Assembly: GCF_902713615.1 (NCBI RefSeq)
Contig: NC_052148.1
Span: 178,731,262 to 178,795,261, forward strand
Direction of reading: 5' to 3'
Source of the DNA: Scyliorhinus canicula
Lineage: Eukaryota
DNA length: 64,000 bases
Below the pieces are notes generated by a model. That model made no database searches. It worked only from the letters and a program-made list of their open reading frames with translations, and was not told the origin of the DNA. The translations under genes and the position numbers were made by a program. Positions 30,726 to 32,440 of this stretch are shown piece by piece. The first letter of the stretch is position 1. Each line of letters opens with the position of its first letter.

Positions 30726-32440
30726 ATGATGAGAGCAACCGTTGTAATGATTCTCGTTCTGCTCCTGGGTGCCATTACTACACAGGGTATGTTGAATATC
30801 TTGTGTTTTAGTTCTAATTGCTCTATAATGTGTAGAGAGGAGCCTTTCTATTGATGTATTGACCAGCGATACGTGTTTCAGTGTGCAGTTTGGTTATTGA
30901 TTGAGAATTAAATAGCAACTGATGCTATATACTGTTGAGAATATAAAGCTTGTTTTAATACTGAATTGAATGCTGAAACAAAATACCAAAATTCTGTCAA
31001 CTTCTGACAATATCTAACTATAAGTTAAATTAATCGTTTCACATATAGAGGCTGGTTTAGCTCACAAGGTTAAATCGCTGGCTTTTAAAGCAGACCAAGC
31101 AGGCCAGCAGCACAGTTCGATTCCCGTACCAGCCTCCCTGGACAGGTGCCGGAATGTGGCGACTCGGGGCTTTTCACAGTAACTTCATTGAAGCCTACTC
31201 GTGACAATAAGTGATTTTCATTTCATTTTCAGGTATCCCAATCCCGGGCAGTCAAGGCCGGTGCCAGTGTCCTCAGACCAGCTCCATTCCTATCAATCCA
31301 AGGGACATCAAGAGTTTGAAATATATTCCCAAAGGACCACACTGCGAGACACTGCAAATAATGTGAGTATCTGTGTTAGAATGTCAGCGTTAACCTTTCC
31401 CCTTCAGCTACATCCATTTAGATGCTGCACTCCATGTTGGGTCAATCACAGTTTGTTTATGAGGCACATTGAAAGGATTTTGTTTCATAAATTTGCTGAA
31501 TTCCCACCTCTTGGTGGGAAACATTTGAGTTTGATTTTAAACATTTATCTTCTCTTCACAGTGTGACCATGAAAAACAGGAGCAGGGTCTGTGTGAATCC
31601 TGATGCTGATTGGGTGAAGATTATCATTAAAGCCACAAAAGGTTGGTGTCAAAATTCAGACTTTATGCGAATAAAGGCAGATACATTGAATTGGCTTTTT
31701 AACCATGTGTGTCCTCTCATCCTTCGTTGAGGGCATTGAATCCCCTCTGTTGCATGTTCCTAGAGCTTTCTGGTACTTTGCTCATGTGTCCAGTATTTAT
31801 GTGTGATCTGTGAGAATGAATGCTAGAAGGTATTCAACCACAGTTGTCATCAGGTCTCTGTGCTGCCGCCTCTTCATCCAACATCCGTATATATAAAATC
31901 CAGGAAGAGTTGGGGTGTCATTGGATAGCAATCCGGTGCAGGACTGTTTTGGGATTTCATGCGCCATCACCCACAATACTGTGTCCAATTGTCATACCTT
32001 TAGTTACTAGCTGAAATCAGCCAATTCTTCACAGACCATTGAGCAAAAAGGGATCTCTCTGGACCACTTTCATCTCCTTTCCCTGCTGCCTTCGGCCCTT
32101 TATAGCTTACTCCATGGTTTTCTGCTCTGCATTGTAAGCTGTATTAATGCATCATTTTAAACCCTTTATTACCTGTTCTCTTTTAACTTTCAACATAATA
32201 TTCCTGCAGAATTAATTGTTCACTGTGGCTCCATGGATCTGGCATGTTAATTTTCTAATATAATTTCAATGAATTGTTAACAAAATAAACTGTTAGCAAT
32301 GCTGTGTAACAGCTCAATTAATAATGCCCTCAAATTTTGTTGCTGGAGGCATTGTCCTTGATATTAAAATAAATGCCTGCTGTATTTAAGAAAATTATAA
32401 TTTATTTCACTTTATTTCAGGTGCCAGACAACGCAACTGA
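30726..32440 (+). CDS. CXC chemokine copy 2 (tandem paralog), 4 coding exons: 30726-30786, 31233-31362, 31562-31641, 32421-32440
   Basis: Same exon sizes and phases as copy 1, open frame: MMRATVVMILVLLLGAITTQGIPIPGSQGRCQCPQTSSIPINPRDIKSLKYIPKGPHCETLQIIVTMKNRSRVCVNPDADWVKIIIKATKGARQRN*. Confidence 0.94.
31048..31230 (+). repeat. Short tRNA-derived SINE with (TTTCA)n tail, inserted at the intron-1 acceptor of copy 2
   Basis: Matches copies at 22343-22522 (+) and 50400-50580 (-); absent from intron 1 of copy 1. Confidence 0.92.

What the first reader, a model, noticed from the sequence alone, without database searches (positions are those of the whole stretch)
31030..31240. SINE landed in the splice acceptor of copy 2 and its own tail rebuilt the acceptor
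Seen: intron 1 of copy 1 ends atcttttcacAG|GTATCC. Copy 2 reads atcgtttcaca-[about 185-bp SINE]-gattttcatttcattttcAG|GTATCC. The insertion moved the original pyrimidine tract and upstream intron about 190 bp away, but the SINE's (TTTCA)n tail supplies a new polypyrimidine tract directly before the AG, so exon 2 starts at the same base and stays in frame. Inference: tail-target microhomology (tttca) guided the insertion, so this SINE family may preferentially hit TTTCAG-type acceptors and be tolerated there.
Basis: partly seen in the sequence, partly recalled or inferred. Interest (0 to 1): 0.8.

Follow-up and report, generated by a model that had tools for sequence, protein, structure and literature searches.

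The report
SINE tail rebuilt a chemokine splice acceptor
A short mobile element landed inside the last two intron bases before exon 2 of one copy of a duplicated shark-type chemokine gene. Its T-rich tail now serves as the end of the intron, and RNA data show the gene is still spliced at exactly the same base, which makes this a tidy but single and largely expected example of mobile DNA replacing splice signals.

Summary
Copy 2 of a tandem CXC-chemokine gene carries a 186-bp insertion (31044-31229) exactly between CACA and G of the ancestral intron-1 acceptor. Three paralogs keep the empty site (copy 1, and L033 and L034 outside the window).

The insert has three parts:
- a 4-nt filler
- a 178-nt tRNA-derived SINE, from a family of roughly 10^5 copies in this 4.2-Gb genome
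- a (T3-4CA)3 tail

The specific interpretation is supported. RNA contigs from three independent studies match copy 2 with 0-1 mismatches. They join 30786 to 31233 (GT..AG) and continue through exons 3 and 4. No contig shows intron retention or use of the SINE-internal CACAG.

At least 45 nt upstream of the AG is therefore SINE-derived: a TGAC branch-point candidate at -29, the polypyrimidine tract, and probably the CA of the CAG. Only the G is certainly original.

The generalisation is not supported:
- Attributable microhomology is 2 nt (CA). Family-wide, left flanks end in CA in 29% of copies against 7.7% background.
- TTT before that CA is not enriched.
- The only tail-like target that is enriched is other copies' tails.
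- About 5-10 such acceptor hits are expected by chance genome-wide.

The closest precedent is the canine merle SINE in PMEL. The scan's earlier notes on this genome mention SINEs at splice donors but no case like this one.

The parts
30657..30786 (+). Copy 2 exon 1: 5' UTR, ATG at 30726, signal peptide. The 5' limit is the start of the longest RNA contig, not a mapped transcription start.
   Evidence: RNA contig pieces end at 30785/30786 with a GT..AG joint (tables 5 and 8). Sequence.
30787..31232 (+). Copy 2 intron 1 (446 nt), which contains the SINE at its 3' end.
   Evidence: Joint 30785->31232 'skips 446, GT..AG (cut +1)' in X1, X3 and X7. Depth is zero in the unique intron bins 30805-31006.
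31011..31043 (+). Displaced remnant of the ancestral 3' splice region: the CTAAC branch-point candidate (31015-31019) and the old pyrimidine tract ...aatcGtttcaca, which carries a derived T>G change. It lacks the final G.
   Evidence: Alignment to copy 1 14941-14971. Paralogs L033 and L034 read atcttttcacag.
31044..31047 (+). 4-nt filler TATA at the 5' junction. It is absent from the empty sites and from the SINE consensus.
   Evidence: Consensus 5' end is GGGGCTGG. Empty sites.
31048..31214 (+). SINE body, tRNA-derived head plus unique 3' region. It differs from the family consensus at 9 of 176 positions, 4 of them CpG transitions. The box-B-like AGTTCGATTCC is at 31114-31124.
   Evidence: ARAGORN tRNA-like call at 31049-31138. 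Alignment to consensus. Genome-wide copies.
31170..31179 (+). SINE-internal acceptor-like CTTTTCACAG, identical to the ancestral acceptor 10-mer. It is not used in any RNA contig.
   Evidence: 10-mer occurrences. One search shows no joint ending at 31179/31180. Use of this site would add 53 nt and shift the frame.
31201..31205 (+). Candidate new branch point GTGAC (A at 31204, position -29) inside the SINE. This is a prediction only.
   Evidence: Motif scan. The old CTAAC stood at -28 in copy 1 and is now about 214 nt from the AG.
31215..31229 (+). SINE tail TTTTCA TTTCA TTTT, the new polypyrimidine tract.
   Evidence: Tail forms across the family. The same three-unit tail occurs in 316 of 2,338 AAGTGAT-variant copies.
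31230..31232 (+). The functional CAG. The CA is ambiguous: it is either the end of the SINE tail or a 2-bp target duplication of 31042-31043. The G is the original acceptor G.
   Evidence: Overlapping BLAST boundaries. Joint at 31232/31233.
31233..31362 (+). Copy 2 exon 2 (130 nt), encoding the CXC motif GRCQC. It differs from copy 1 exon 2 at 7 positions.
   Evidence: RNA contigs with 0-1 mismatches (table 8). Pfam IL8 E=3.3e-5. Mismatch count.
31562..31641 (+). Copy 2 exon 3.
   Evidence: Joints 31362->31562 and 31639->32419 (cut +2). Pfam IL8.
32421..33300 (+). Copy 2 exon 4 (stop codon at 32438-32440) and a long 3' UTR that runs past the stretch that was laid.
   Evidence: Contig pieces 32419-33300 (table 8). 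Sequence.
14953..14972 (+). Copy 1 intact ancestral acceptor (empty site): ttaatttaatcttttcacag.
   Evidence: The same sequence is in paralog L033, and L034 differs only slightly.

Best explanation
After the copy 1 / copy 2 duplication, a LINE-dependent, tRNA-derived SINE inserted in sense orientation inside the CAG of copy 2's intron-1 acceptor. The mechanism was target-primed reverse transcription.

The bottom strand was nicked so that its ...CCTG-3' end paired with the terminal CA of the SINE RNA tail. This gave a 2-nt microhomology, seen now as a 2-bp CA duplication. Four extra bases (TATA) were added at the 5' junction.

The old pyrimidine tract and branch point were pushed about 186 bp upstream. 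The new 3' splice site is chimeric. The SINE's 3' end supplies a TGAC branch-point candidate at -29, an 18-nt tract that is 78% pyrimidine made of the (T3-4CA)3 tail, and probably the CA. The target supplies the G.

Splicing therefore continues at the same phosphodiester bond and the protein is unchanged.

Shown: the anatomy, the polarity of the event, and correct splicing of copy 2 mRNA. Inferred: the priming geometry, the branch point, and that the RNA came from SINE-bearing alleles.
For: - Exact insertion boundaries with a 2-nt overlap.
- The empty site is kept in copy 1, L033 and L034, so the insertion is derived.
- The family is abundant: about 10^5 copies by capture-recapture of two exact patterns. 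It has a variable-length T(n)CA tail of 2-9 units.
- Target-site duplications in the family are short and variable. In the young set 27% are 5 bp or longer, against 5% in the null. The chromosome-1 sample is about at the null. A 2-bp duplication is therefore not unusual.
- Left flanks end in CA in 14 of 49 copies, against 7.7% background.
- The three-unit tail seen here is present in 13.5% of AAGTGAT-variant copies.
- One contig per run in X1, X3 and X7 (three studies) spans exons 1-4 of copy 2 with 0-1 mismatches and the GT..AG joint 30786/31233. Unique intron depth is 0 and no alternative joint appears.
- The 3' splice-site architecture is similar before and after. The branch-point candidate moved from -28 to -29, and pyrimidine content from 0.72 to 0.78.
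Against: - Logan contigs drop rare isoforms. An isoform using the internal CACAG would be frameshifted and probably degraded, so minor mis-splicing is not excluded.
- The one raw-read run (X20) barely expresses the gene, with only 2 reads on the exon 2-3 joint.
- The RNA individuals were not genotyped for the SINE.
- The branch point is only a motif prediction.
- The 4-T last tail unit equals the ancestral target's TTTTCA, which leaves room for the target-duplication model described under the rivals.
Confidence: 0.82

Rival explanations
1. The acceptor was rebuilt by target-site duplication, not by the tail. In this model an 8-bp duplication of TTTTCACA regenerated ...TTTTCACA|G on the right side, and a later CA slippage deletion gave TTTTCAG. 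The SINE would still supply the tract from about -9 upstream.
For: The ancestral site has four Ts (cTTTTCAcag in copy 1, L033 and L034), matching the last unit before the AG. In the unbiased sample the third tail unit is TTTTCA in only 4 of 90 copies. CACA is prone to slippage.
Against: It needs an extra deletion. It also needs an 8-bp duplication, which is longer than nearly all seen in this family. The tail form TTTTCA-TTTCA-TTTTCA is itself common, at 13.5% of AAGTGAT-variant copies.
Confidence: 0.07
2. The correctly spliced RNA comes from SINE-less alleles of copy 2, the insertion being polymorphic, and the SINE allele is itself mis-spliced or silent.
For: The RNA runs were not genotyped. 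Contigs cannot show the intron.
Against: The SINE copy differs from its consensus at 9 of 176 positions. Its left flank has also acquired a substitution since the insertion or duplication. Such an old insertion is unlikely to be still segregating. Three studies give the same contig, and the reference exon sequence is matched exactly.
Confidence: 0.05
3. The family targets TTTCAG-type acceptors through tail-target homology and is enriched and tolerated there genome-wide.
For: There is a CA preference at the junction. Insertion into other copies' T(n)CA tails is clearly in excess: about 38% of the 615 TTTCA-proximal heads continue TTTCATT, against 8% background. The SINE 3' end plus a following G always forms a consensus-like acceptor.
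Against: TTTCA within 0-6 nt of the head occurs in 2.3% of copies against about 1.3% background, and the excess is largely the nested-in-tail class. TTTCA at offset 0 is about 0.5% against about 0.7% expected from the CA preference alone. G follows the tail in only 10 of 90 copies. About 5-10 chance hits are expected.
Confidence: 0.12
4. The SINE was ancestral to the gene family and was precisely lost from the other paralogs.
For: None beyond formal possibility.
Against: Three paralogs of different ages share the identical uninterrupted acceptor. Precise SINE excision is not a known process. The SINE's divergence is no greater than that of the flanking intron.
Confidence: 0.01

Closest known systems
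Canine merle SINE (SINEC_Cf) at the intron 10 / exon 11 boundary of PMEL (PMC7349775)
   Same: A SINE is inserted at a constitutive splice acceptor. Its tail lies directly upstream of the acceptor and acts as the polypyrimidine tract. With short tails the original junction is still used. The SINE body also carries a cryptic acceptor.
   Different: - The merle SINE is antisense and its poly(A) reads as poly(T). Here the SINE is in sense orientation and the tract is a LINE-type (T3-4CA)n tail.
- In merle a 15-bp target duplication preserves the original acceptor. Here the duplication is at most 2 bp and the CAG is chimeric.
- Merle is a recent allele that causes a phenotype and has length-dependent mis-splicing. 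This insertion is old, sits in one paralog, and shows only normal splicing in the contigs.
TE-derived 3' splice sites and exonization (antisense Alu poly-T; zebrafish HE1 SINE exonization, PMC2911107)
   Same: A SINE sequence provides the polypyrimidine tract and acceptor signals used by the spliceosome.
   Different: Those cases create new, mostly alternative exons. Here no SINE sequence enters the mRNA, and the element replaces the intronic signals of an existing constitutive exon.
Stringent-type SINE/LINE pairs with short tandem-repeat tails (for example UnaL2 with TGTAA repeats and template slippage; review PMC3747384)
   Same: A tRNA-derived head, a unique 3' region, a 3' tail of a variable number of 5-6-nt repeats, short or variable target duplications, and junctions that share 1-2 nt with the tail.
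   Different: The partner LINE was not identified here. Tail-recognition and slippage mechanisms are inferred from other families and were not tested.
HE1 / V-SINE of sharks and rays (partner LINE HER1; PMC3747384, PMC2911107)
   Same: A tRNA-derived SINE of elasmobranchs without a poly(A) tail.
   Different: The consensus here is about 178 nt plus the tail, against 402 bp reported for HE1. No reference sequence was available, so membership is untested. No paper in the searchable library contains this element's diagnostic strings.

Membership tests
tRNA-derived, LINE-mobilised SINE | tRNA-like head with internal pol III box A and box B | tested here: met
   ARAGORN calls a tRNA-like structure at 31049-31138. 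The consensus contains GGTTCGATTCC (box B) and TAGCTCACTGG (box-A-like). Rfam gave no tRNA hit, so the head is degenerate.
tRNA-derived, LINE-mobilised SINE | High copy number of dispersed copies of similar length | tested here: met
   There are 23,395 and 26,960 exact matches to the 3' and 5' patterns on all chromosomes, roughly equal on both strands. The copy-number estimate is about 10^5.
tRNA-derived, LINE-mobilised SINE | 3' tail of short tandem repeats, variable in unit number | tested here: met
   Tails have 2-9 T(n)CA units across 90 sampled copies.
tRNA-derived, LINE-mobilised SINE | Target-site duplications flanking copies | tested here: inconclusive
   In the young set 27% have duplications of 5 bp or more, against 5% in the null. 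The chromosome-1 sample is not above the null. This locus has 0-2 bp.
tRNA-derived, LINE-mobilised SINE | 3' end shared with a partner LINE | not tested
   SINE copies swamp any search with the 3' end. No LINE with this tail lies in the window.
HE1 / V-SINE | Central V-domain and about 400-bp consensus homologous to published HE1 | not testable with these tools
   No reference sequence was available. The length here (178 nt plus tail) differs from the 402 bp quoted in PMC2911107.
TE-supplied 3' splice site | TE sequence lies immediately upstream of an AG that is used in mature RNA | tested here: met
   The SINE tail ends at 31229-31231. The joint 30786/31233 is seen in contigs of 3 studies.
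TE-supplied 3' splice site | The TE-borne tract and branch point are the ones actually used | not testable with these tools
   There is only a motif prediction (TGAC, A at -29). The old CTAAC is about 214 nt away, with several AGs in between.
CXC chemokine (Pfam IL8, PF00048) | IL8-domain match and CXC cysteine motif | tested here: met
   Exon 2 and exon 3 peptides each score above the Pfam cut-off (24.4 and 24.2 bits against 21.3). The motif is C-Q-C in copy 2 and C-L-C in copy 1.

The most novel reading that the evidence does not exclude
The 3' 45 nt of this roughly 10^5-copy shark SINE (TGAC branch-point motif, T(n)CA tract, terminal CA) may be a portable, ready-made 3' splice site. Because the family prefers to integrate at CA, sense insertions at CA|G would regenerate acceptors. 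The family would then be tolerated at, and would repeatedly renew, constitutive acceptors. The ancestral acceptor here may itself be a relic of an older related tail or core: it has the identical 10-mer CTTTTCACAG, and its 3'-end similarity to the SINE gives p of about 0.015, a comparison made post hoc.
Probability: 0.12. Interest if true: 0.6.

Novelty: new member of a known kind. Interest (0 to 1): 0.35.

Why it matters
This is a clean natural experiment. One paralog keeps the ancestral acceptor, and the other has had its branch point and pyrimidine tract swapped for SINE sequence, yet the mRNA junction is identical.

It shows that non-poly(A), LINE-type SINE tails can serve as splice signals in sense orientation. 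It also illustrates neutral turnover of intronic splice signals by mobile DNA in a cartilaginous fish.

It gives a ready pair of constructs (with and without the SINE) for splicing assays. It does not by itself establish a targeting mechanism, and one such case is expected by chance in a genome carrying about 10^5 copies.

Tried and rejected
- **5-bp duplication at this locus.** I looked for a standard CAGGT or CACAG duplication. The left junction reads CACA-TATA-GAGG, so neither fits.
- **Extended TTTCA homology on the target side, family-wide.** It was not enriched beyond the CA preference.
- **Shared junction at G000:C3:60363597.** This copy has the same 11-nt left junction, TTTCACATATA|GGGG. 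Its flanks are unrelated, so it is not a paralogous locus and is most likely coincidence.
- **Ancestral intron end as an old SINE tail.** The score is marginal (p about 0.015, post hoc), so I make no claim.
- **Rfam scan of the SINE.** Only noise.
- **Literature string search for the SINE.** No paper found.
- **Raw-read run X20.** The gene is almost silent there, so no quantitative splice-isoform data could be obtained.
- **Copy 1 expression.** I could only glimpse it through word shares (0.10-0.18), which is not interpretable because exon 1 words are shared between the copies.
- **Partner LINE.** Not found in the window.

Full report
**What is there.** The window is G000:C3:178731262-178795261 of a 4.22-Gb vertebrate genome. 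It holds two tandem copies of a four-exon gene. The exon 2 and exon 3 peptides each match Pfam IL8 above the curated cut-off, and they carry a CXC motif.

Self-BLAST aligns copy 1 14286-14971 to copy 2 30355-31043 (94.5%), and 14970-15503 to 31230-31773 (91%). Copy 2 therefore carries a 186-bp insert at 31044-31229. The dinucleotide CA (14970-14971) aligns to both edges.

- Copy 1 reads aatcttttcacAG|GTATCCC.
- Copy 2 reads aatcgtttcaca, then TATA, then the SINE, then gattttcatttcattttcAG|GTATCCC.

**The insert is a real, abundant SINE.**
- Two further copies lie in the window.
- A whole-genome search gave copies 96-97% identical on many chromosomes.
- Exact-pattern counts are 23,395 for a 33-nt 3' end and 26,960 for the 18-nt 5' end, with none for the reversed controls.
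- Of 90 copies sampled through the 3' pattern, 25 also have the exact 5' pattern. This gives roughly 10^5 copies.

The consensus built from these copies is 178 nt. It runs GGGGCTGGTTTAGCTCAC ... GGTTCGATTCC ... GTGACAATAAGCGA TTTTCA TTTCA. ARAGORN sees a tRNA-like fold in the head, and Rfam sees nothing. Tails have 2-9 T(n)CA units.

By this consensus the SINE at the finding starts at 31048, so 31044-31047 (TATA) is filler. The copy differs from the consensus at 9 of 176 positions, and four of those are CpG transitions.

**Polarity.** A search with copy 2's exon 1 and intron 1 found two more paralogs just outside the window.
- L033 lies upstream and reads ttaatttaatcttttcacag|gtatccc.
- L034 lies downstream, is more diverged, and reads atcgatcttttcacag|gtattcc.

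Three empty sites against one filled site show that the insertion is derived in copy 2 and that the ancestral acceptor was cTTTTCACAG. The G in copy 2's left flank (tcGtttcaca) is a derived substitution in the stranded old tract.

**Is the rebuilt acceptor used?** Four runs were laid on 30300-33300 at 97% or higher likeness. In X1, X3 and X7, which come from three different studies, one contig per run covers four pieces:
- 30657/30708/30684 to 30785
- 31232-31362
- 31562-31639
- 32419 onward

The joints are GT..AG when shifted by the stated 1 or 2 ambiguous bases, so the first joint is 30786/31233. The X7 contig (1,341 nt) has no mismatch at all, and the others have 0-1 per piece. Copy 1 differs from copy 2 at 7 positions in exon 2 alone, so these are copy 2 transcripts.

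Depth is zero in the unique part of intron 1. No joint ends at the SINE-internal CACAG (31179).

There are caveats:
- Contigs drop rare isoforms.
- A 31180 junction would add 53 nt, shift the frame and probably be degraded.
- The raw-read run X20 barely expresses the gene.
- The RNA donors were not genotyped. The age of the insertion makes a segregating SINE-less allele unlikely, but that is an inference.

**What the SINE now supplies.** In copy 1 the last 45 nt contain a CTAAC branch-point candidate at -28, a tract that is 72% pyrimidine, and the CAG. In copy 2 the last 45 nt are SINE. They contain GTGAC with the A at -29, a 78% pyrimidine tract formed by TTTTCA TTTCA TTTTC, and the CAG. The old CTAAC is now about 214 nt away, with several AG dinucleotides in between.

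At minimum, positions -3 to -45 are SINE-derived and the G is original. The CA may be either the end of the tail or a 2-bp target duplication.

**Tail or target duplication?** The last unit has four Ts, like the ancestral cTTTTCAcag. One could therefore imagine an 8-bp duplication (TTTTCACA) followed by loss of CA. This needs an extra event and an unusually long duplication for this family. Meanwhile the tail form TTTTCA-TTTCA-TTTTCA occurs in 316 of 2,338 copies (13.5%) that share the AAGTGA variant, though in only 4 of 90 of the unbiased AAGCGA sample. I keep the target-duplication model at about 7%.

**The generalisation.** I tested what could be tested without an annotation.

1. Target duplications are short and variable. 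Among the closest relatives 27% have 5 bp or more, against 5% for shuffled pairings. A chromosome-1 sample is not above the null.
2. The base before the SINE is A in about 70% of copies. The last two bases are CA in 14 of 49 copies (29%) against 7.7% background. This fits 1-2 nt of pairing between the nicked target and the tail's terminal CA, as at this locus.
3. TTTCA within 0-6 nt upstream of the head occurs in 615 of 26,960 copies (2.3%), against about 1.3% expected.
   - In the first 100 listed, 38 continue TTTCATT, against 8% background. These are insertions into other copies' tails.
   - 23 are at offset 0, or about 0.5% of all copies. That is no more than the roughly 0.7% expected from the CA preference times the background P(TTT|CA) of 0.024.
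   - Tail-like arrays are therefore preferred targets, or else tandem dimers arise by template switching. A single TTTCA next to the break is not preferred.
4. G follows the tail in 10 of 90 copies.
5. With about 10^5 copies and an assumed 1.5-2.5 x 10^5 acceptors, 5-10 sense hits within a CAG are expected by chance before selection. The acceptor number is my assumption.

In the standard target-primed model the primer is the bottom strand to the right of the nick. The target's TTTCA, which stayed on the left, could therefore not have primed.

**Comparison with known cases.** The closest precedent is the merle SINE at the PMEL intron 10 / exon 11 acceptor. There the tail reads as poly(T) and serves as the polypyrimidine tract, and short-tailed alleles splice normally (PMC7349775). 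The differences are orientation, tail type, a 15-bp duplication that preserves the acceptor, and the phenotype.

SINE-borne acceptors are also well known from Alu and from zebrafish HE1 exonization (PMC2911107). Repeat-tailed, LINE-dependent SINEs with slippage are reviewed in PMC3747384. Whether this element belongs to HE1/V-SINE could not be tested, and no paper in the library contains its diagnostic strings.

**Verdict.** The microhomology claim shrinks to CA. The proposed family-wide acceptor preference is unsupported. This is a new, well-documented instance of a known kind of event.

Noticed in passing
G000:C1:4176149-4176366 and G000:C1:5303608-5303682 (also L059 and L103 left flanks): The first 18-20 nt of the SINE head (GGGGCTGGTTTAGCTCACA) occur as head-to-tail arrays with a 19-20-bp period, up to at least 12 units. 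This suggests 5'-end slippage or template jumping, or later microsatellite-like expansion.
   Followed up: no
window 14963-14972 against 31170-31179, 22465-22474 and 50456-50465: The ancestral acceptor 10-mer CTTTTCACAG is identical to a 10-mer inside every SINE copy. The last 60 nt of the ancestral intron 1 align to the SINE 3' end better than 98.5% of shuffles and better than about 30 other TTTCAG sites in the window. This could be coincidence between pyrimidine-rich acceptor-like strings, or a relic of an older related element.
   Followed up: partly
window 31142-31190; L007 and L015 partial hits: A second, highly expressed repeat family shares only this roughly 48-nt core of the SINE. Hundreds of X20 raw reads match just this stretch and run on unlike on both sides. 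It ends in ...GCCTACTTGTGACAATAA(TAA/ATT)n, which suggests a SINE superfamily with a shared central domain.
   Followed up: no
L033 (G000:C3:178715116-178718562) and L034 (G000:C3:178795140-178798315): The chemokine cluster has at least four tandem genes. One lies upstream and one downstream of the window. L034 carries its own copy of the same SINE in a later intron, with a clean 5-bp duplication CATAG.
   Followed up: partly
genome-wide; for example L014, L087, L092, L106: About 1% of copies sit head-to-tail in the T(n)CA tail of another copy. This is far more than the share of the genome made of such tails. It indicates tail-directed integration or RT template switching between SINE RNAs.
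   Followed up: partly
G000:C3:60363597-60363625 (L125): An unrelated locus has the same 11-nt left junction, TTTCACATATA|GGGGCTGG, as the finding. The flanks are unrelated, so this is probably chance.
   Followed up: yes
window 32584: The X1 RNA contig carries a 23-nt insertion in the copy 2 3' UTR relative to the reference. X3 and X7 do not, so this is an indel polymorphism (table 4).
   Followed up: no
window 10084-10326: A perfect 122-bp tandem duplication, 100% identical.
   Followed up: no
window 32398-32420: The intron 3 acceptor of copy 2 (aatttatttcactttatttcag) is also TTTCA-like. Its similarity to the SINE tail is not above shuffles (p about 0.12). TTTCAG-type acceptors are simply common.
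   Followed up: yes
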